From: Guillardia theta CCMP2712
Taxonomy: Eukaryota; Protista; Cryptophyta
Assembly: GCF_000315625.1 (NCBI RefSeq)
Contig: NW_005434657.1
Location: forward strand, 575,407 to 639,406
Reading direction: 5' to 3'
Length of the DNA: 64,000 bases
In this document: piece by piece, positions 28,520-37,495 of the stretch
Position numbering within the stretch: position 1 is the first letter of the stretch
Layout of the letters: each line of letters begins with the position of its first letter
Program-made: the position numbers and the translations under genes
Notes under the pieces: generated by a model
What the model saw: only the letters and a program-made list of their open reading frames with translations
The model's database searches: none
What the model was told of the DNA's origin: nothing

Positions 28520-29062
28520 CCCCTGCTCGGCCCCCTGTGACCATTATCACATGATTCTTCTTTGCTCGACTCTTTCAAGCTGCGTGCAAGTAGAACAGTC
28601 CTCCCATGCATGCTATTCTAATAGTCAACTACTCTCTGACCGATCATTAGCGATTGAGAACCGCCAGGTAACAGGCAGAGTGCATCGCAACACTTTGTGT
28701 AATCCTAAACCCTCATCATCTCTCTTTGGTCCACCCCCTCCCGCCTCGCTATCTCAAGTGAACTCTTGCAATCATCGTTATGTCTATCCAGGTCCTCCTG
28801 TCCACACTCCTCCTTCAACTCCCTCCCTCCCTCCCTCCTCTCCCTCACTTCCTCTCCCTCCCTCCTCTCCCTCCTTCACTTCATTGTACACGATATGCGT
28901 CCCCTGCAAGTAAATGTGACAAGCCCGCCTCAGCGATTGTAAAAGGCAGCAAGTTCTTTCGCTTTTTCTGATAGTGAGACATCGCTGTCCTGTAACCTCC
29001 ACGTCTCATTCGCCCGACAACTGGGCAGGGAGGAGGGAGGGAGGAGGGAGGGAGAACGGGCG

Positions 29063-32000
29063 ATGGGGAGGGAGAGGTATGCGCAGGATGGGGTAGCTTT
29101 CCTGCGGCTCCTGCTCCTGCTCTCTTCCGTCTGGTCGTGTGTGGGACAGCAAGTGAAGACCCGCAACCTCAAGGGCCCGGCGTCGCAGCCATGGAAATGC
29201 AAGCCGGTGAAGATACAGGGGAACTGGCATGGACACTACCTGCATGATACAACTTTCGTCAAGTGGGAATGCGAGATGACGTCATCAGTGCAACAGGTCT
29301 ATCAGGCCACAGTGAACTACCGGCCATCGAGCGAGATGTTCATGGACGTGAACAATGTCTTCGGCGTAGCCAAGTCTCGAACTTCCACCGGAACAGTGAT
29401 CTTTCTCGGAATGTTCGACAAGGTGGATGACTGTGAGCTTGCCTGCTTCCGATATTCGTCAGGAGGAGCGAAGTGCAATGCTTACTCGTGGCATCGACCG
29501 GCATTTGGGTCTCATGAATGGCGGCGGCAGTGTTTTGCTGTCGTCGATGGCCACTGGGTACCTCATCAACAAAAGGGAGTTGTGAGCGGGCGAGTGGTGC
29601 GCCACAGCACTTCCATGCAAGATGCAGATGGTAGAGGATGTGTCGATCGCTGCAGCGGTCATGGAGTCTGTCAGAACACGACGGGAACATGCATCTGTGA
29701 CACAGGCTTCTCTGGTTTTGACTGCAGCGTGGAGGTGGCCTGCGACTCGGCGACAGTGGGAGGAAGGTGCTACACTGTCTTCGAGAAGAAGACTTCATGG
29801 AAGAAGGCGCAGGAAAAGTGTAAGCTGGGAGGAGGAACGCTGGCGATCCTGCAATCGAAAGAGCAGCAGAATGCGCTGCTCGGAGTGTTTGGAGGATGTA
29901 ATAGTGCGTGGATAGGTCTGAATGACATGAAGGAGGAGGGATCGTACGTGTGGCAGGATGGGCCCCGTGCCACATGGTTCAACTGGGCAAAGAATGAGCC
30001 CAACAACAAGGGCAACGAGGACGTGGTGTTGTTGCGGAAGGACACCAAGCAGTGGTATGACAGCGCCGGGAAGGCCGGGATGGCAGACTGCTATGCTTGC
30101 TCCTACAAGGAGGGACAGAGCAGCGCACACGGAGAGGAAGCGTCCTCCTGCGCGAGAGACTGCTCGGGACATGGAGTGTGCGGCGCAGTCACGGGGATGT
30201 GCACGTGCGAGGAGGGATATTTTGGTGCAGATTGTTCTAAGAAGACACCCTGCGAAGGGTTCACCCTCGACCAGATGTGCTTCGTGGTGTACCCGGAGGC
30301 AGGAAGTAGGACAAAGGCTGAGGAGAAGTGCCGCAGCAGGGGAGGGCAGCTGAGCGGGGTTTACTCGCACCAGCACGAGCAGAAGCTGCTGCAGCTGGGC
30401 AGGGCGAAAGGATGTCGGATGCAGGAGATGTGGATAGGGCTGAATGACCAAGAGCGGGAAGGATCGTGGGAGTGGTCTAGCAGGGAGATGAGCGACGTGG
30501 ACTACGTGAACTGGCTGCCGTGGGAGCCCAACAATGGAGCGGCCGAGATAGGAGGACTCTCGCAAGAAGAGGAGGATGGGGTGGTGATGGACAAGTTCGG
30601 CTGGACAGACGTGAACATCGCGCGGAGCAACATTTCCTGCTTCGCCTGCGAGTTTGCAGGAACTGGTCTGCACGAAGCATCCTCAGCCTTGAGCCGACAT
30701 GGCGAGAAGGCTCTTGACTCGCCCGTCCTCTTCAACTTCTTCGCTCCTGACTTGGACCCTGTCCTTCGTCGTGTCTCCTGCCCTCCAGGGGTCGGCGAGT
30801 GTGTCGACGATGAGGAAGTTGGGGACGCAGAGCCGTTTGTGTGCTCTGCTCACGACCCCAACTATATAGACGAGGAGGAGGCCGAGGCGGAGGAGGAGGA
30901 AGAGGTGACTCCCCTGGCCAAGACTTGAAGTTACTGACATGTTGATCGTGGTGGCAGGGAGCAGAAGCTGAAGGACAGGAGGGAGATGAACAGGTCATTC
31001 ATGCCCCTCTTGGTTCTGCCCCTGACATCTCGCCTCGCAGACACTGGAGGAGGTGGTGCAGGAGGAGGAAGACGCGACGAACATTCCTCCAGCAGCTGTA
31101 GTAGAGCTCCCGCCCAGCAAGTGCCGAGGGCCCCTGCCTCTCATGAACACAACAGCGGAGCGATGCTGGCGGTCCTGCTTCAAAGTGCAGGAGAGGTTCG
31201 GGGAGGCGGCGGGCGACAACTGCAGGCAGATGTGTGTGAGGCTGGCCGGGTTGATCAACGAGGACATGGTGCTGGTGGCTGCAGGGGAAGGCCAGGACGT
31301 GCTGGACTTCTATGCGGGAGTGAACATATCTGACCCCTCCAAAGTTGGGACTCAGGGGAGCGAGGAGGAGAAGCAAGTCAGGACAGAAGCGCTGGTCAAT
31401 AACGTCTGGGCGGCGGCTGTGCATGTCGGTCAGCACGAGAAGGCGGAGAGAGCGATCACGAAGCTCCTGCAGGCGCATCCCAACTTCCTCATGCTCCACT
31501 ACACCCTCGGGGTTGCGCTGATGACTCAAGGGAGACTGCAGGAGGCGAAGTCGTGCTTCCGTCGCTGCATGGACAGCGGGGCTGTGAAGGCTCAGTGCCT
31601 CACGAGCATGGGCAACATCCTCCTCAAGCAGGGCCACGTCGAGGAGGCGACGCGCGTCTTCCTGCTGGGAACTTCTTCATTCCCCAACTACCCTCCGCTC
31701 TTCAGCGGCCTTGCAGCAGCAAGACTGCAGCGATCCAACCCCGAGGAGGCGTTCGCAAGCGCCCTGCGTGCTGTCCGTCTCCGCCCTTCGGTGGTCCACT
31801 ACCGGCTGCAGGCAGCCCTTGCAGCCAGAAGGTCAGGCAACTCGACGGCAGCGATCGAGATCCTCCAAGAGGGGCTAAAGCAGCCGGGAGGACGCGACGA
31901 GGCGGCGCTGCACGTGGTGATCGCAGAGGTAGCGGAGGGGATGGTGGAGGAGCTGCAGAACAGGCGGTCACTGCGGTACCTGGAGGCGAACCTCTGCTCC

Positions 32001-32840
32001 GATCGATGTGCATGGCAGCAAGGAAATTCCTCCTTGCATGGCGGAAGGATCCCCCTGTTCTCCGAGTCAGCTCGCATGGCACTGCGATCTTATCGTCTTG
32101 CTATCCGTAGCCTGCGAAGGCTACGGGATGAGGTGAGAAGATGGAGGGGAGGGAACCACGGAAGGCAAGAAGGAAGGGAAGGGAGGGCAAGAAAGGAAGG
32201 AAAGAGGGAAGGGATGCAAAACGCACTTGAAGAGAAAGAATTGCTTGGACAAGTTTCGCTCTGACTCGCAGCAGGCTGAGAGGTGCGAGGAAACGTTCGG
32301 GAACGAGACAGTGATGAAGTGCGGCCGCGCTCCTCCTCTCGTTGAGATTCTTCGCCTTCGGGCGTTGATGGCGAACCTGCTGGGAAAGCTCGGGGGATGG
32401 GAGGAATCCCTTGCCATCCACTCCCAGATCCTCGCGCAACGAGCAGGTCAACCTGCGCTCTTTTTCCCTCCCTCCCTCCCTCCCCTCCTTCCCCTCCCTC
32501 CCCTCCCTCCCCTCCCTCCCTTCCTCCCTCAACTCATACGCAGGCTTTGTTCCTTCTCTTTTGGGAAAGGCATCGGCTGCTGCAAACTTGCAGCAGCACA
32601 AGGTAATATGTCTTCGAGGAAGACGACGAGATTGAGGATGAGAAGAGGAGAAGAGAGAAGAAAAGATGAGAGCGAGGAGGAGAAGAGAGGAGGAAATGAC
32701 AGCAGTTGGCAGGTGGTTGGGGAGGCGATCGAGATTGCGATGCAGCAAGGGATGCAGATGAATCAAGCTCCCTCTGAGACTCGAGTGCTCTACGGAAATG
32801 CGCTGCTCGAGCATGCGAGATCTCTCATTCAGGTATATAG

Positions 32841-32937
<97 letters not shown>

Positions 32938-34448
32938 CCTTCCTTTTCCACTCCCCCTGTTCCTTCTCAATTTGCTTTTGCTCCCCGATTTTCTGGTGTT
33001 GCTTTTACGAGCTGATTTGGGTACAAGGAGGGGAAGCTCCGAGAGTCGCTTCCTTTGCTGAGAACAGCGATGAAGGTGAGGCGACTAGATGATACAGAGA
33101 GGGTCGAACGAGAGGAGTGGGAGAAGCAGGAGGCAGCGATGAGATTGCGGTGGCGCACGAGGAGGAGGGAAAGGAGGGAAAGAGAAAGCAGGAGGGTGAG
33201 GCAAAGGTGATGAATGAATTTACTAGGTCGATTCCTCGAGGACGCTGCCGTATGCTGTAGATGCCTGGCGTCTCCTGTGCCGGGTCTACTACAAGCTGAA
33301 GCATCCTGAACCAGGTCTCTTCCTCCTGCTCAACCCGCGTGTCTTCTCTTGTCTTCCCTTCCTCCATCTTGTTGCTGCTGTCGTCTCCTTCACGTCTCCA
33401 ACTCGCTGACTCTCTGCCAGCGACCTATGCCTGTAGCTGGAGTGTCAAACTCTCCCCACAGGCTGTGGAGCCTCGACAAGCTCTGCAGTGGGCTGAGGAG
33501 GAGGTGAGGGAGGGACGGGAGGAGGAAGCGGCTGATCTCGTGGAGTAGACGAAGGAGCTCCGCAGGCAGAGAGAGTTCAGAGAGCGAGCAAGGCAGCGCG
33601 AGCAGAAGGAAAAGCGCAAGGCGGAAGAGGCGAAGAAGAAAGTCGAGGAGGACAAGTGGAAATATCAGGTTCTTTCCTGCTCGATCCTCTTACGCTGAAG
33701 CCTCCTGTCAGTTCGGAGATGGCAGTTGGAGGGAAGGGAAAGGAGGAGGGCGAGGAAACAAGAAGGGGAAGCAAGGAAAGTCGCCTTCGCAAACCAAGAA
33801 GGTTCCTCGGTTGTTCCCACCCCCTCGCCTCCTCCTCCTTCCTGTGACCAAGATTGCAGCGGGTTGTACGACATCCTCGAGCTCAAGCCCTCCTGCACGC
33901 GTAGCGACATCAAACGAGCATACCACAGGTGGGAGGGAGGAAAGGACAACGGAGGATGAGCTGGTGGTGGTGATGGTGCTTATGGTGGTGGTGATGGAGG
34001 AGGGGGAGGGGGAGGGAGAAGGAGGAGAGGGGGAGGGGGGGTGGGGAGATTGCTAGTGCGGATTCACGCCTTGACGACCACTCAGACTGTCGCTCAAGTG
34101 GCATCCAGACAAAAATCCTGACAACCCAAATACGCCAAAGAGGTGAGGGGAGGCGGAGGAGCTGGTGCAGTGTGAAGGGCTTGAGGATGGGAGGGGAGAA
34201 AGTAGGAAGACGAGGGGGGGCGGGGGGCGGGAAGGATGAGAAGAAGGGTGGGGCGGGGAGGCAGAGGAGGTTCTCTGAGCTATGGAGCAGAGACGAGAGG
34301 AAGGAAGCAGAGTCCAAGTTTCTCCTCATCGTGCAGGCCTACCAGGTGCTTGCTAGTCACGTTGGCAGCGTCTGACGTCGAGTAGGAGCTGCTGCTACGA
34401 CATGAGGATGGAGCTGCAGATGACGACGTTCACTGCGTTAACTGCTAA
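29063..34448 (+). CDS. Secretory-pathway multidomain protein: signal peptide, PAN/apple-like, EGF, C-type lectin, EGF, C-type lectin, acidic linker, TPR repeats, coiled coil, C-terminal DnaJ domain
   Basis: Exon 1 has FLRLLLLLSSVWSC, CSGHGVC..C.C..GF.G.DC twice, WIGLND..EPNN twice. GT-AG splices join it in frame to the TPR exon (about 31041-32131) and onward to LYDILELKPSCTRSDIKRAYHR|LSLKWHPDKNP..|EAESKFLLIVQAYQ|ELL..NC* (stop 34446-34448). Confidence 0.8.
32842..32940. repeat. (GCTCCT)n microsatellite, intronic
   Basis: About 16 hexamer copies. Confidence 0.95.
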
Positions 34449-34559
34449 GCAGGAGGAGGGAAAGGGAAGGGGAGGGTGGGGGAAGGGGAGGAGGACGAGG
34501 ACGAGAGGTTTCTATCCTTCATTCATCGCCCTCGACCTCATTGTCTGAGTAAAAGAATA

Positions 34560-37102
34560 TGCTTACTGTACAAGTTTGTCGTTCTATCCCCATCGTCCTC
34601 TGCTTCCGCTTTTCGCTCCCTTGTCTTCGTGGACCAGACGGTCTGACGACATGCAAGTCAGTCTTCCCCCGTCTCCTCCCCTCTCATCTCACTCAGCGAC
34701 TGTCGCAACCGCAGAGCTCTCTTCCTGCTCTCTGCCAGCTGACGATGAAGCTCCTCGTCGCTGCTCATGTCCTCCTGCATCGACTTGGTCAGCTGAGCGT
34801 CGCCGGGCAAGGGTCGGGGGTGGCTAGAATGAGGCAGGAGGAGGAGGAAAGGAGAGAAAGCGGAGGGAGGAGAGGTTACCTCCATCCCATTCAGCGCCAG
34901 TCTGTCAACAGAGGATGCAGCAGCTTCTTCGCCAAGTCGAAGCCCTGCAGCACACATCACGAGACCTCAGCCATCAACCCCTCCCCTCCCACCTCTACTC
35001 TGCTCTGCATCCTTCATCACAAGCGAGCTGCTATTCCGCATTGTAAGGCGGCGGATCAATCTCTCCCACGCAGACTCCGCCTGCTTGTTTCCTCCGATCG
35101 CCTTCGGGATCGCATCCAGATTGTGCTCCTTCATGCACGACTGCACCTTCTCCTCGTTCTGCTGCAGGGCCAACCGCACCACCTGCTCCTCCTCTTCATT
35201 CAGCACCAGCTGCTCCGCGATCGTCTCATGCAGCGCAAGGTTCTCGGACGATCGATACTTGAACTGACTGTGAGCGTCAGACACGATGCTCGAGAGCAGA
35301 GAGATCCGGCTCGTCACGTTCCTCATCGCCTCTGACGACGCCAGTAGGCGAGCCTGCAGCTCCACAGCCAACGCTTCGCTCTCCTCCTTGAGCTTCTCGA
35401 CAACTCCCAGCTGATGGTCCAGCAGCTCCAGCTGCTCGTTCAACCGCAGGAGCAGCTCCAGCAGGATACTCTTCACCTCCTTGACCTCCTCCGTGTCCTC
35501 AATGTGGATCTCGAGCTGCTCGCCCCTGCTTTGCCTGCGATCCTGCAGCAGCGGGTCGAGGCTGTCGATCCTTCTCTCCATCTCTAGCAGGCGTCCAGTG
35601 TCAGAGCTGGCTCGTCTAAGTTGGTTTTGGCTCAAAAGCTTCAGAATGTACAAGATCAGCTCCCGCTCATCGAGGATGTTCTTCTTGCTCTCCTCGTTCC
35701 TCTGTACGGATTGTTGGTAGTGTCTTGCAGCAACCTTAGCAGCCTCGGAGACAGAGAGATTCTTCATCGCCTCATCGTTGTACAACTCTTCAAGACGATT
35801 CAACTTGCTCTGCTTATCTAGCAACTTGGACTGGATTGTGAGGAACAAGGAGCTAGAGTTGTGAAGTTTTTCTTCAGCCTTGCTGTCTGCACTTGAAAGG
35901 CTCGCATTCTTTGCCAGCAGAATGGAGAGCATGGCGCGCAGCCCTTGTGACACCATCATGGTCCCTAAGCAAGGTTGCATGCCGACCGCAATCTTCTCGA
36001 TCAGCTCATTGAGTCTCCTTCTCAATCGCATCACGTCCTCTAGATTCTGCTGGTTCCCCTTGTGGACGAGCGACATCGATGATCCGACGCCCTGAATGAG
36101 GTCAGCGAAGCTCGAGTTGAGCGAGAAGATGCTGATGAAGCTCGCGTCCTTCCATGCCTCCAGCATCGGCTGCAACTTTCCTATCTCACCTTCCGCTTTC
36201 GCAACCAACGAGGAAACTTGTACGACCATATCATTCCACATGCGCAGCTTATTCTTCACTCCTTGCTCGGCGGTGTCGGTGAGATTTCGAGCTAATCGAC
36301 TCCAGAAGCTCATCTTGCCGTCTTGTGCAGCAAACAAATCTTTCTTCACCTCGTCTCCTCTTGCACGAAGAGTGTTGCCATACTTTTTCAGCGTGTCTTT
36401 GATAAAAGTGCGGTAGGACTGACTCTGGCTGTCTAATACAACGTTCAGCTTGTTTGCATCTCTTGCCAGTGCTCGGACATTTCGGTCTCGTTCATCAAAC
36501 GCCGTCGTCTTAAGCACTGGTGGAACCCTTGTGTAGAGGTTCTGAAGCGCTTTCAACGCTTTGTCTTGTATTTCGTCTCTCTGCCTGTTGCTTTGACGCA
36601 TGTCAATCGCCTCCTCCTTGATGCGATGGAGGGTCTTGATCTGTTCCTCCAAGTCGAACTTCCTCATCACCGCTTCCTCTGCCGCGTGGAGCCTACCTCT
36701 GGCATTTAGCAGGTCGGTATGCATAAGGCTTCTCCACACCCCTCTCTCCCCCAGGTAAGCTCTAACCATGTCCGCAGAGGATTGCAACTGTTTGTTGACC
36801 TGCGGTTGGATTTCGTAGAAGGCTTCTATCTTCTCCAGCTTCTCTTTCACTCGCTCTTCCTCAGTCTGAATGTCTTCCCCATCCCAGTCTACCATTGCTG
36901 TACTCTGTCTCCGTCCAAATTCCCGGCGAGCTTGGGCCAGGAAAAGGTCTTGATCTCTTCCTTTTTCATTTGACATGAGCTCGATCTCATCACTCCTGAC
37001 CTTGCCGTTGGATCCCTCAGATCTGATCACGAGCAGCAGGACCGTCCCGATGAAGCAAGCGGCAGTCCCGATGACAAAGATCTTTCTCCCCCACTCAGCC
37101 AT
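34560..37102 (-). CDS. Long coiled-coil protein with N-terminal signal anchor (type II membrane or secreted), unknown function; 3' end approximate
   Basis: Open frame of about 2.1 kb from MAEWGRKIFVIGTAACFIGTVLLLVIRS (ATG 37102), then L/E/K/Q-rich heptads; probable short 3' exons near 34600-34950. Confidence 0.75.
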
Positions 37103-37495
37103 ACCGCCGGCAGTTCGATCAGTAGAGCAAGAGGGAGGAGGAGGAGCGAAGTTGATCCTCAGCTGGAGGGCGACCATCACCTTCCTACCGCCATGTGCGC
37201 CCAATATAGTTTAACGGTTGTAACTGTCGTTCACAACAATCCGTAACGACTGTAACGATTGCTGAAGGGTACCCCACCCGATACCGAACAAGGGTAGTCA
37301 AAATAACGAAGTACCCCCATAAACTACCCAATATAACCCCACCTTTGTACTGGATTTCTCACCCCACCCCCCTTGATGCTACCACCCTTCATTTATTACT
37401 CCCCAAGGGTCCTGCCACGTACCCCCAGAGGAGACTACCCCCTTTCTGCCAATGAAAACCACCCGTCCTCCATCCTCTAAGAACCCTCGTGCGCG

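What the first reader, a model, noticed from the sequence alone, without database searches (positions are those of the whole stretch)
29063..34448. Lectin-TPR-DnaJ fusion: candidate glycan-guided Hsp70/BiP co-chaperone
Seen: what the ORF track shows as separate ORFs splices into one open frame through GT-AG introns (e.g. ..EEEE|GAEAEGQEGDEQ|TLEEVVQEEE.. and ..KWKYQ|LEGRERR..NQE|DCSGLYDIL). The product is signal peptide, PAN-like, EGF, C-type lectin, EGF, C-type lectin, TPRs, coiled coil and a J-domain with intact HPD. I see no internal TM helix and no KDEL/HDEL. Both lectin domains carry EPN. Established: EPN marks mannose/GlcNAc/fucose-type C-type lectins, and signal peptide + TPR + C-terminal J is the layout of ER-luminal P58IPK/DNAJC3. 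Inference: one protein could bind high-mannose glycoproteins and hand them to BiP, a quality-control route distinct from calnexin or OS-9. I do not know of a characterised protein with this architecture.
Basis: partly seen in the sequence, partly recalled or inferred. Interest (0 to 1): 0.85.

Follow-up and report, generated by a model that had tools for sequence, protein, structure and literature searches.

The report
Lectin-headed TPR J-domain co-chaperone gene
One expressed 15-exon gene of the alga Guillardia theta encodes a secreted-pathway protein that joins two C-type lectin domains to a TPR array and an Hsp70-recruiting J domain; at least five other organisms share this layout and no paper I searched describes it, but its function is untested.

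Summary
RNA contigs from three studies join 15 exons (29063-34448, +) through 14 GT-AG introns into one 1333-aa frame. Both reader junctions around the 12-codon microexon are exact. Two later junctions were slightly misplaced.

The product runs: signal peptide, PAN/apple-like domain, EGF, CTLD, EGF, CTLD, acidic linker, twin-CX3C hairpin, TPR array, charged helix, Gly/Lys linker, C-terminal J domain with HPD. There is no second hydrophobic segment and no HDEL. The protein ends in a conserved HC[VI]NC.

Collinear orthologues exist in metagenome and run assemblies. One is from a marine metagenome and has a single intron. The gene is single-copy in G. theta.

49 of 50 mature cysteines are conserved in that orthologue, including 16 of 17 in the TPR-J half. 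This argues that the whole protein sits in an oxidising lumen. G. theta BiP ends in HDEL.

An ER-lumenal BiP co-chaperone with a lectin-type head is the best reading. It is inference only.

The glycan claim is weaker. EPN and E-D are kept, but the WND asparagine is absent in every orthologue, and one orthologue has lost EPN.

The TPR-J module belongs to the DNAJC3/DNAJC7 class. Specific kinship to DNAJC3 is only hinted. No paper found describes the fusion.

The parts
29063..30904 (+). Exon 1 (aa 1-614): start codon, signal peptide, PAN/apple-like domain, EGF1, CTLD1, EGF2, CTLD2, start of the acidic linker
   Evidence: RNA contigs start at 29065-29071 and run to the donor at 30904/30905. Pfam Lectin_C 9.4e-24 and EGF_2 1.5e-11.
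29063..29146 (+). Signal peptide (about aa 1-28; cleavage probably after SCVG)
   Evidence: Highest hydrophobic 19-mer, KD 1.78, at aa 10-28. Orthologues P0029, P0180 and P0181/L026 also have a hydrophobic N-terminus, followed within 6-11 residues by the conserved Q[VTA]KTRNLKGPA..QPWKCKP. That gap is too short for a plastid transit peptide.
29147..29632 (+). N-terminal beta-rich region plus PAN/apple-like domain (aa 29-190; Cys 46, 70, 124, 128, 138, 157)
   Evidence: The AF2 model is of low confidence (pLDDT 52.8; 70-79 over model residues 81-150). The top structural matches are mostly PAN/apple domains: plasma kallikrein Z 8.6, FXI/kallikrein apple 8.5, leech antiplatelet protein 7.2, SML-2, plasminogen, TgMIC4, HGF N domain. 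ESM features point to PAN clusters at 0.92. Pfam PAN_4 E=0.058.
29633..29734 (+). EGF-like domain 1 (aa 191-224)
   Evidence: Pfam EGF_2 / EGF_Teneurin, aa 193-224.
29738..30109 (+). C-type lectin-like domain 1 (aa 226-349); EPN at 29996-30004, E-D at aa 319-320, W-Y-D at aa 331-333
   Evidence: Pfam Lectin_C. PDB sequence hits: DEC-205 7.5e-35, PLA2R, Endo180, mannose receptor, DC-SIGN, MBP-A. Column statistics over 1155 CTLD segments place Y332 in the WND Asn column and V321 in the EDC Cys column.
30143..30241 (+). EGF-like domain 2 (aa 361-393)
   Evidence: Second stretch of Pfam EGF_2 / EGF_Teneurin. Six Cys at 363-391, all conserved.
30248..30658 (+). C-type lectin-like domain 2 (aa 396-532); EPN at 30524-30532, E-D at aa 504-505, W-T-D at aa 514-516
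   Evidence: Pfam Lectin_C second stretch. PDB hits to DEC-205, mannose receptor and others. Column statistics.
30958..30993 (+). Exon 2: 36-nt microexon (GAEAEGQEGDEQ) inside the acidic linker (aa ~575-650)
   Evidence: Joints 30904|30958 and 30993|31041 appear in X1, X2 and X4. It is in frame.
31041..32132 (+). Exon 3 (aa 627-990): end of the linker, twin-CX3C helical hairpin (Cys 654, 668, 672, 687, 691; 31122-31262), first part of the TPR array
   Evidence: Pfam TPR_2 3.5e-14 and other TPR families. The AF2 model shows 13 helices from residue 108, with pLDDT 80-96 over 120-280. The hairpin Cys are conserved in L026, P0001, P0071 and P0180.
32275..32446 (+). Exon 4 (TPR array, continued)
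   Evidence: Joint 32132|32275. The donor at 32446 is inferred from contig arithmetic.
32544..32602 (+). Exon 5
   Evidence: 61 unplaced contig letters between pieces fit 4+59-2 nt. Joint 32602|32713 is listed.
32713..32832 (+). Exon 6
   Evidence: Contig pieces at 32711-32830.
33028..33075 (+). Exon 7
   Evidence: 48 contig letters between pieces. Joint 33075|33227 is listed.
33227..33314 (+). Exon 8 (last TPRs; Cys1141)
   Evidence: Joints. The Cys1141/Cys1157 pair aligns with the P58IPK Cys313/Cys329 disulfide.
33421..33503 (+). Exon 9 (Cys1157; start of the charged helix)
   Evidence: Joints 33314|33421 and 33503|33549.
33549..33668 (+). Exon 10: E/K/R-rich helix (aa 1181-1220)
   Evidence: Joints. 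It aligns without a break to the uninterrupted ORFs of P0188 and L026.
33712..33809 (+). Exon 11: conserved Gly/Lys-rich linker (GDG.W..G.GGG.GNK.G)
   Evidence: Joints 33668|33712 and 33809|33860. Conserved in L001, P0188 and L026.
33860..33928 (+). Exon 12: J-domain helices I-II
   Evidence: Pfam DnaJ profile positions 2-23. Joints.
34086..34142 (+). Exon 13: J-domain HPD loop (HPD = 34102-34110)
   Evidence: Joints 33928|34086 and 34142|34291. HPD is conserved in L001, P0188 and L026.
34291..34345 (+). Exon 14: J-domain helix III
   Evidence: Pfam DnaJ profile positions 35-54. Joint 34345|34386, a 40-nt intron, appears in three runs.
34386..34448 (+). Exon 15: end of the J domain, conserved C-terminal HCVNC (34431-34445), stop TAA at 34446-34448
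   Evidence: The same ...AYQELL.RH....HC[VI]NC* ending occurs in L001, P0188 and L026.

Best explanation
This is one single-copy, expressed nuclear gene of Guillardia theta. It encodes a soluble 1333-aa protein that enters the secretory pathway and stays entirely on the lumenal side. The C-terminal half is a class-C J-domain co-chaperone of the 'TPR array + C-terminal J domain' type (the DNAJC3/DNAJC7 class), with an intact HPD. The only Hsp70 in that compartment is the HDEL-bearing BiP. The protein therefore most likely works in the ER lumen, where the J domain triggers BiP ATP hydrolysis and locks BiP onto whatever the rest of the protein holds. The N-terminal half (PAN/apple-like, EGF, CTLD, EGF, CTLD) is a ligand-binding head of the kind found on extracellular adhesion and lectin proteins. 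I infer that it selects the client or the site, which may be a glycan or a protein surface. The TPR array would add a second, peptide-binding platform as in P58IPK. Shown here: gene structure, expression, domain order, lack of a TM segment, conservation, and Cys conservation. Inferred: ER residence, BiP partnership, and client selection by the head.
For: One transcript: in-frame GT-AG joints link all exons in contigs of three studies.

One protein in other organisms:
- P0071 and P0180 carry CTLD2, the acidic linker and the CX3C hairpin in a single uninterrupted ORF.
- L026 (marine metagenome) has the whole gene as two ORFs split by one intron of about 105 nt. It is 50-60% identical from aa 29 to 1333.
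- L001/L020 are collinear over aa 31-1333.
- P0188 is an uninterrupted ORF that matches aa 1004-1333 end to end.

The gene is single-copy in G. theta.

Topology: there is a signal peptide and no other hydrophobic segment. 49 of 50 mature Cys are conserved in L026, including 16 of 17 in the TPR-J half.

J domain: Pfam DnaJ scores 3.3e-13 and 3.6e-13 in orthologues where it is unsplit. HPD is invariant. PDB J domains match at down to 2.5e-11.

TPR-J class: ESM features place the C-terminal 330 aa among DNAJC7 and DNAJC3 clusters and algal TPR-DnaJ clusters, at 0.94-0.95. The last TPRs hit only DNAJC3 chains at E<0.01 in the PDB, with both Cys of its 313-329 disulfide aligned.

Partner: a G. theta Hsp70 ending in ...HDEL lies at C52:344306-346120.

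P58IPK itself is an ER-lumenal BiP co-chaperone with an N-terminal ER signal, nine TPRs and a C-terminal J domain (PMC3143134).
Against: There is no retention signal, since the protein ends in HCVNC, so ER residence is not shown. The head is built from modules typical of secreted or surface proteins, and G. theta has many such proteins. There is no localisation, binding or ATPase data of any kind. The TPR array looks generic by sequence and fold: OGT and consensus TPRs score best, and P58IPK is not in the top 50-60. The DNAJC3-specific hit is marginal (E 0.004-0.007) and is not reinforced by a three-sequence profile. The one raw-read RNA run sampled (X19) gave almost no reads over the gene.
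Confidence: 0.55

Rival explanations
1. Both CTLDs are Ca2+-dependent mannose/GlcNAc-type lectins that bind high-mannose N-glycans of folding glycoproteins and pass them to BiP. This would be a third lectin-chaperone route beside calnexin/calreticulin and OS-9.
For: EPN and the following E-D are present in both CTLDs and kept in G. theta, L001, L002, L003/P0029, P0180 and L026. The ER is rich in Ca2+ and in high-mannose glycans (established knowledge). The long acidic linker resembles the low-affinity Ca2+-binding tails of ER residents (inference).
Against: The fifth Ca2+/sugar ligand, the Asn of WND, is never present. It is Y/A/S in CTLD1 and T/V/A/R in CTLD2. The canonical EDC...WNDxxC disulfide is replaced by a different Cys pair. 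Orthologue P0071 has EP-R plus a degenerate loop in CTLD1 and EPD in CTLD2, so a mannose-type site is not a conserved property of the family. Many CTLDs bind proteins rather than sugars (established knowledge).
Confidence: 0.2
2. The protein is exported as a secreted or surface-associated adhesion or recognition lectin. The TPR-J half would then act only during transit as a built-in escort, possibly cleaved off at the acidic linker. Alternatively, it travels out with clients as secreted ERdj3 does in animals.
For: There is no HDEL, whereas G. theta BiP has one. PAN/apple, EGF and CTLD modules are typical of extracellular proteins. G. theta encodes many surface-lectin fusions.
Against: An invariant HPD, a conserved J domain and a conserved extreme C-terminus over 40-60% identity argue that the J domain is used, which requires an Hsp70 and ATP. 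From general knowledge (not checked here), P58IPK and ERdj3 also lack K/HDEL yet act in the ER.
Confidence: 0.15
3. The protein is a chloroplast-ER factor. In cryptophytes the ER lumen bathes the second plastid membrane. The protein would hold plastid-bound (glyco)preproteins with BiP and present them to the SELMA translocon.
For: Only circumstantial. It is a lumenal TPR-J protein. TPR domains serve as preprotein receptors elsewhere (established knowledge). The family was found so far only in G. theta and in unnamed intron-bearing contigs.
Against: There is no evidence on localisation or partners. The taxonomy of the other carriers is unknown, so no link to plastid-bearing lineages is shown.
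Confidence: 0.05
4. These are two neighbouring genes, a secreted lectin and a TPR-J protein, or a membrane receptor with a cytosolic TPR-J tail.
For: The ORF track shows a stop at 30926-30928 after the lectin ORF. Prokaryote-style gene callers split the orthologues in the same way.
Against: In-frame spliced joints across 30905-31040 appear in three studies. Single ORFs span the junction in P0071 and P0180. No TM segment is found in any orthologue. Cys are conserved throughout.
Confidence: 0.02

Closest known systems
DNAJC3 / P58IPK / ERdj6 (ER-lumenal BiP co-chaperone)
   Same: It shares an N-terminal ER signal, a TPR array followed by a helix, a flexible linker and a C-terminal J domain with HPD, and lumenal disulfides in the TPR part (PMC3143134). 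The last TPRs of this family give DNAJC3 chains as the best PDB hits, and the Cys1141/Cys1157 pair lies on P58IPK Cys313/Cys329.
   Different: Here about 650 extra N-terminal residues (PAN/apple-like, EGF, CTLD, EGF, CTLD, acidic linker) and a twin-CX3C hairpin precede the TPRs. The TPR region is longer, about 430 aa, and is not organised as 3x3 as far as I can tell. Most of it resembles generic or OGT-type TPRs. The similarity to DNAJC3 is marginal (E about 0.005). There is a Gly/Lys-rich linker and a conserved HC[VI]NC end.
DNAJC7 / TPR2 (cytosolic TPR + C-terminal J protein)
   Same: The order is the same: a TPR array, then a J domain. ESM features score it as high as DNAJC3, at 0.94.
   Different: DNAJC7 is cytosolic, has no signal peptide, and binds Hsp70/Hsp90 EEVD tails. 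The protein here has a signal peptide, disulfide-type Cys conservation and a lectin head.
Yos9/OS-9 - Hrd3/SEL1L - Kar2/BiP lumenal ERAD surveillance module
   Same: The logic is the same three parts: a lectin, a TPR-like scaffold and Hsp70 recruitment on the lumenal side. Here they would be united in one polypeptide (inference from established knowledge of ERAD).
   Different: Those are separate proteins. The lectin there is an MRH domain, the scaffold is made of Sel1-like repeats and is membrane-anchored, and BiP is not recruited through a J domain of the scaffold. No homology was shown here.
Calnexin / calreticulin lectin chaperones
   Same: They are ER proteins that use a Ca2+-dependent lectin domain to pick glycoprotein clients and recruit a folding factor.
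   Different: They have a legume-lectin-type fold, not a CTLD. They recruit ERp57 and cyclophilin B through the P domain, not Hsp70 through a J domain.
Mannose-receptor family CTLDs (DEC-205, PLA2R, Endo180, MRC1)
   Same: These are the best sequence matches of both CTLDs. Both are long-form CTLDs with the N-terminal Cys pair.
   Different: Those are animal type I membrane receptors with 8-10 CTLDs. Here there are only two CTLDs, a non-canonical second disulfide (a Cys before WIGL paired with a CxxC at the last strand), no WND Asn, and a fused co-chaperone.
ERdj3 / DNAJB11
   Same: It is a soluble lumenal J protein without K/HDEL that can leave the ER with clients (established knowledge).
   Different: It is a class B J protein with an N-terminal J domain and a G/F region, and it has no TPR or lectin domains.

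Membership tests
J-domain proteins (Hsp40 co-chaperones) | J domain of four helices, recognised by the DnaJ profile | tested here: met
   The window pieces hit profile positions 2-23 and 35-54. Unsplit orthologues score 50 bits against a 27.8-bit cut-off: P0188 3.3e-13 and L026 3.6e-13. PDB J domains match at down to 2.5e-11.
J-domain proteins (Hsp40 co-chaperones) | Intact His-Pro-Asp between helices II and III | tested here: met
   HPD is at aa 1282-1284 (34102-34110) and is invariant in L001, P0188 and L026.
J-domain proteins (Hsp40 co-chaperones) | Stimulates the ATPase of a partner Hsp70 | not testable with these tools
   This needs a biochemical assay. A BiP with HDEL exists in the genome.
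DNAJC3 / P58IPK | N-terminal ER signal sequence and lumenal location | tested here: inconclusive
   A hydrophobic N-terminus is present in four orthologues, and the Cys conservation fits an oxidising compartment. No signal-peptide predictor or localisation data were available.
DNAJC3 / P58IPK | Nine TPR motifs in three subdomains (PMC3143134) | tested here: inconclusive
   The model of exon 3 shows 13 helices with 5 confident TPR pairs. More TPRs follow in exons 4-9. The number and the subdomain structure were not resolved.
DNAJC3 / P58IPK | C-terminal J domain joined by a helix and a flexible linker | tested here: met
   A charged helix (aa 1166-1220), a Gly/Lys linker (1221-1252) and then the J domain to the C-terminus.
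DNAJC3 / P58IPK | Specific sequence or fold kinship to DNAJC3 rather than to TPR proteins in general | tested here: inconclusive
   The exon 3 TPRs match OGT and consensus TPRs best, with P58IPK not in the listed top. The last TPR segment has 3ieg and 2y4t as its top two PDB hits (E 0.0036 and 0.0066), with both Cys of the 313-329 disulfide aligned. A three-sequence profile gives no preference. ESM features tie DNAJC3 with DNAJC7.
Ca2+-dependent carbohydrate-binding C-type lectins | CTLD fold recognised by Lectin_C | tested here: met
   Pfam 9.4e-24 with two stretches. Many PDB CRDs match.
Ca2+-dependent carbohydrate-binding C-type lectins | EPN (mannose-type) or QPD tripeptide, followed by an acidic E-D/N | tested here: met
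   EPN 312-314 with E319-D320, and EPN 488-490 with E504-D505. These are kept in five orthologues and lost in P0071.
Ca2+-dependent carbohydrate-binding C-type lectins | WND motif supplying the Asn and Asp ligands of Ca2+ site 2 | tested here: not met
   The motifs are WYD and WTD. The Asn column (N in 195 of about 386 aligned CTLD segments) holds Y/A/S and T/V/A/R in all orthologues.
Ca2+-dependent carbohydrate-binding C-type lectins | Canonical C3-C4 disulfide (EDC ... WNDxxC) | tested here: not met
   V321 and G506 occupy the Cys column. Conserved Cys279/Cys343 and Cys451/Cys526 appear instead.
Ca2+-dependent carbohydrate-binding C-type lectins | Ca2+-dependent sugar binding | not testable with these tools
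   This needs a glycan array or mannan binding assay, with and without EDTA.
PAN / apple domains | A helix packed on a curved beta-sheet with the PAN Cys pattern | tested here: inconclusive
   Most of the top structural matches are PAN/apple domains, at Z 8.6-4.6, but the model has pLDDT 52.8. ESM score 0.92. Pfam PAN_4 reaches only E=0.058.
TPR proteins | Tandem 34-residue helix-turn-helix repeats | tested here: met
   Pfam TPR_2 3.5e-14, TPR_14 and TPR_1. The model's pLDDT reaches 96. Foldseek assigns probability 1.00 to TPR superhelices.

The most novel reading that the evidence does not exclude
A lineage-restricted ER quality-control or sorting factor that carries, in one chain, what other eukaryotes spread over several proteins: a lectin-type recognition head, a TPR client platform and a J domain that loads BiP. 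Recognition by the head, of a glycan or of a specific surface, would be coupled directly to the Hsp70 cycle. This would be a route not described for calnexin/calreticulin, OS-9/Yos9 or any ERdj protein. In cryptophytes it might also serve the traffic of plastid-bound proteins through the chloroplast ER.
Probability: 0.2. Interest if true: 0.8.

Novelty: new variant of a known kind. Interest (0 to 1): 0.6.

Why it matters
J-domain proteins give Hsp70s their specificity, and each new client-binding module attached to a J domain marks a new job for the chaperone. I found no described ER J protein that carries a lectin domain. The two known ER lectin systems, calnexin/calreticulin and OS-9/EDEM, do not act through a J domain. 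A conserved, expressed protein that fuses C-type lectin domains to a P58IPK-like TPR-J module would give a directly testable case of glycan-coupled or adhesion-module-coupled BiP recruitment. It also shows that animal-type CTLD, EGF and PAN modules were put to lumenal, chaperone-linked use in a protist lineage. If the head turns out not to bind sugars, the finding is still a new J-protein architecture with a defined family of at least six members.

Tried and rejected
1. Alternative transcripts ending at exon 1. Contig loose ends at 30897 and 30905 map to scaffolds C27 and C31, so they are acidic-repeat collisions. A 1756-nt CG..CC 'joint' in one X2 contig has a 21-nt side and non-canonical ends, and I ignored it.
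2. Finding the annotated G. theta protein. No 100% hit appeared in either protein library. The window's own genome seems to be withheld, so I could not see how public models split the gene. P0179 (97% identical, 621 aa) is a close strain called through intron 1.
3. The search for related loci. With a single sequence it returned only generic TPR loci, without lectin or J matches.
4. Synteny of flanking genes with L001-L004: none.
5. Kinship of the main TPR array to P58IPK by sequence and by fold. Only generic TPR matches came back. A three-sequence profile did not sharpen the DNAJC3 hit.
6. The N-terminal domain model is of low confidence, so 'PAN/apple-like' remains a lead.
7. Paralogues. There are none. 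The only other matches are a distant CTLD on C59 and two weak TPR matches.
8. Complex prediction (J domain with BiP) was not run. A generic J-Hsp70 docking would also not tell BiP from other Hsp70s.
9. The taxonomy of the orthologue carriers could not be established with the tools.
10. The raw-read run X19 gave 20 reads, nearly all at the 3' end or the neighbouring gene, so transcript ends and strand could not be read.

Full report
**What is in the sequence.** The window comes from the nuclear genome of the cryptophyte Guillardia theta. Earlier notes of the scan say so, and G000 has 87.1 Mb in 669 contigs. The ORF track between 29063 and 34448 shows a 621-aa ORF, a 403-aa ORF and a string of short ones on the + strand. 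Pfam finds two EGF and two Lectin_C domains in the first ORF (Lectin_C 9.4e-24). It finds a TPR array in the second (TPR_2 3.5e-14) and fragments of a DnaJ domain in two small downstream ORFs.

**Gene model.** I laid contigs of three runs from three studies (X1 2014, X2 2018, X4 2019) and one raw-read run on 28850-34849. In each of the three contig runs, spliced contigs cover the region: one contig in X1 and X4, two in X2. They show 12 GT..AG joints on the + strand.

Two further introns (32447-32543 and 32833-33027) lie in simple repeats that the tool skips. The number of contig letters between the flanking pieces (61 and 48) fits exons 32544-32602 and 33028-33075 to the base. The 15 exons add up to 4002 nt and translate into 1333 aa without a stop, and all 14 introns are GT-AG, 40 to 195 nt long.

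The acceptor after ...KWKYQ is at 33712, so the exon reads FGDGSWREGKGGG...KKVPR. The next exon starts at 33860 with GLYDIL.

Contig loose ends at 30897 and 30905 belong to genes on other scaffolds that share the acidic GAG repeat. The X1 contig runs on into the convergent minus-strand neighbour (CT..AC joint 34642|34693), so the 3' end of the mRNA is not defined. The raw-read run gave too few reads to help.

**The protein.** The domains, in order, are:
- aa 1-28: a signal peptide, the only strongly hydrophobic 19-mer (KD 1.78; the next best is 1.28 and contains charged residues).
- aa 29-190: a Cys-containing domain. Its model is of low confidence (pLDDT 52.8) but still matches mostly PAN/apple domains at the top of a structure search (Z 8.6 to 4.6). 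ESM features (0.92) and a weak PAN_4 hit agree.
- EGF, CTLD (226-349), EGF, CTLD (396-532).
- A short conserved segment and an acidic linker of about 75 residues that contains the microexon.
- A twin-CX3C helical hairpin (Cys 668/672 and 687/691).
- About 430 residues of TPR-type helical repeats (model pLDDT up to 96).
- An E/K/R-rich helix and a conserved Gly/Lys-rich linker.
- A C-terminal J domain with HPD at 1282-1284.

The protein ends ...HCVNC. There is no K/HDEL, whereas the G. theta ER Hsp70 found on scaffold C52 ends ...HDEL.

**Relatives.** The gene is single-copy in G. theta. The large protein libraries hold only fragments of relatives, because prokaryote-style gene calling breaks at introns. 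Those found are P0029, P0041, P0044, P0071 and P0080, P0001 and P0002, P0179-P0186 and P0187-P0188. Their contigs show the same gene:
- L001/L020-L024 (GC 71%, seen in six or more samples) is collinear with aa 31-1333.
- L002 is collinear with aa 30-986.
- L003 is collinear with aa 29-675.
- P0071 and P0180 carry CTLD2, the acidic linker and the CX3C hairpin in one uninterrupted ORF.
- P0188 is an uninterrupted 322-aa ORF that matches aa 1004-1333 end to end, which validates exon junctions 4-15.
- L026, from a marine metagenome (record ERR599315, PRJEB4352), holds the whole gene as two ORFs of 697 and 998 codons separated by one intron of about 105 nt. It is 50-60% identical from aa 29 to the last residue.

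Identity to G. theta ranges from 97% (a close strain) through about 55-68% for most fragments (57% for the GC-rich form) down to 41%. At least five other organisms therefore carry the gene. I could not name them. All full C-termini end HC[VI]NC.

**Topology.** No orthologue has a hydrophobic segment between the head and the TPR part. The conserved mature N-terminus starts 0-11 residues after the signal peptide, so there is no room for a plastid transit peptide.

In L026, 49 of the 50 Cys of the mature G. theta protein are conserved. That includes 16 of 17 in the TPR-J half, which is only about 50% identical overall. Such conservation of paired Cys (CX3C pairs; 994/1006; 1141/1157; 1330/1333) is what structural disulfides give. 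I conclude that the whole protein, J domain included, lies in the oxidising lumen of the secretory pathway. This is inference from sequence, not a measurement.

**What the C-terminal half is.** It is a J-domain co-chaperone of the 'TPR array then J domain' class. The J domain scores 50 bits where it is not split. ESM features place the last 330 residues among DNAJC7 and DNAJC3 clusters and algal TPR-DnaJ clusters at 0.94-0.95, without choosing between them.

The first TPRs look generic: OGT and consensus TPRs score best by sequence and by fold. The last TPR segment is different. Its two best PDB hits are the mouse and human P58IPK chains (E 0.0036 and 0.0066). The alignment puts the family's conserved Cys pair (1141/1157 in G. 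theta, 16 apart) on Cys313 and Cys329, which form a disulfide in the P58IPK crystal structure (PMC3143134).

This is a hint of descent from a DNAJC3-like ancestor, not proof, because a three-sequence profile did not strengthen it. P58IPK is an ER-lumenal BiP co-chaperone with an ER signal, nine TPRs and a C-terminal J domain on a flexible linker (PMC3143134). In layout the resemblance is close.

**What the head is.** Both CTLDs are most similar to those of the animal mannose-receptor family. I aligned 1155 and 886 CTLD segments from the hits to the two domains.

EPN, and the E-D six or more residues later, sit in the canonical columns. The Cys of EDC is Val or Gly here. The Asn of WND is Tyr (CTLD1) or Thr (CTLD2). 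Across orthologues that position is Y/A/S and T/V/A/R, and it is never Asn.

Four of the five ligands of Ca2+ site 2 are thus kept. The canonical C3-C4 disulfide is replaced by a conserved pair, a Cys before WIGL and a CxxC at the last strand. The most divergent orthologue (P0071) has EP-R and a degenerate loop in CTLD1, and EPD in CTLD2.

Sugar binding is therefore possible but not implied, and a mannose-type specificity is not a family-wide property.

**Most likely mechanism.** The protein is most likely a soluble lumenal protein whose J domain recruits and activates BiP, the only Hsp70 of that compartment. Its TPR array offers a peptide-binding platform as in P58IPK. Its PAN-EGF-CTLD-EGF-CTLD head determines on what, or where, BiP is loaded. 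I give this about 0.55.

A secreted or surface lectin whose TPR-J part acts as an escort, or travels with it, gets about 0.15. A role at the chloroplast ER in handing plastid preproteins on gets about 0.05. Two separate genes, or a transmembrane receptor, is essentially excluded.

**Novelty.** Searches of 8.4 million papers for CTLD with DnaJ or J domain, for J-domain architectures with lectin and TPR, and for cryptophyte ER chaperones found nothing that describes such a protein. I could not query domain-architecture databases.

I class it as a new variant of a known kind: a class-C, P58IPK-like J protein with an unprecedented lectin-type head. It forms a small conserved family. Interest is moderate to high for ER proteostasis and protist cell biology. 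The score is limited by the absence of any functional data and by the doubtful sugar site.

Noticed in passing
window 34446-34850 and 34967-37204 (-): The convergent minus-strand neighbour (a 745-aa coiled-coil ORF) has an intron on its own strand at 34643-34692 (CT..AC joint), beyond the end (34967) of its long ORF. RNA contigs run from the lectin-TPR-J gene straight into it. The two 3' ends are therefore very close or overlapping.
   Followed up: partly
window 32447-32543 and 32833-33027: Introns 4 and 6 consist largely of microsatellites, a CCCTCC-type repeat and a (CTCCTG)n run of about 100 nt. On the other strand these produce long spurious RS/AP-repeat ORFs in the ORF track.
   Followed up: no
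window 30905-34385 versus L026:2205-2311: G. theta has 14 introns, six of them only 40-53 nt long. The marine orthologue L026 has a single intron, just before the CX3C hairpin. L001 shares the G. theta intron inside the J domain (after ...AYHR). This is a large difference in intron load within one small family.
   Followed up: partly
L001:6840-7045: Near the J-domain intron donor of the GC-rich orthologue, the motif CTACCACAGG occurs twice about 90 nt apart. Only the second copy is followed by GT. This may be a duplicated donor region.
   Followed up: no
window 34431-34445; L001:7196-7210; P0188 C-terminus; L026:5213-5227: The extreme C-terminus HC[VI]NC is conserved in all four complete orthologues. 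It is a terminal CxxC of unknown role. It could be a redox motif, a thiol-dependent retention signal, or a staple to Cys1265 of the J domain.
   Followed up: partly
L026:3433-4238: Relative to G. theta, the marine orthologue carries an insertion of about 268 codons between aa 995 and 1002, within the TPR region. I did not examine it.
   Followed up: no
G000:C52:344306-346120 (-) = L011; G000:C31:298772-303016 = L008/L009; G000:C13:810189-811391 = L015: The G. theta ER Hsp70 (BiP) ends ...EEEEMPDHDEL. Two near-identical cytosolic Hsp70 genes lie head to head on C31. A further Hsp70-superfamily gene with a signal-peptide-like start on C13 could be the lumenal Grp170-type exchange factor.
   Followed up: partly
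P58IPK was first known as a PERK/PKR inhibitor. The proximity is probably coincidental and I did not examine it.
   Followed up: no
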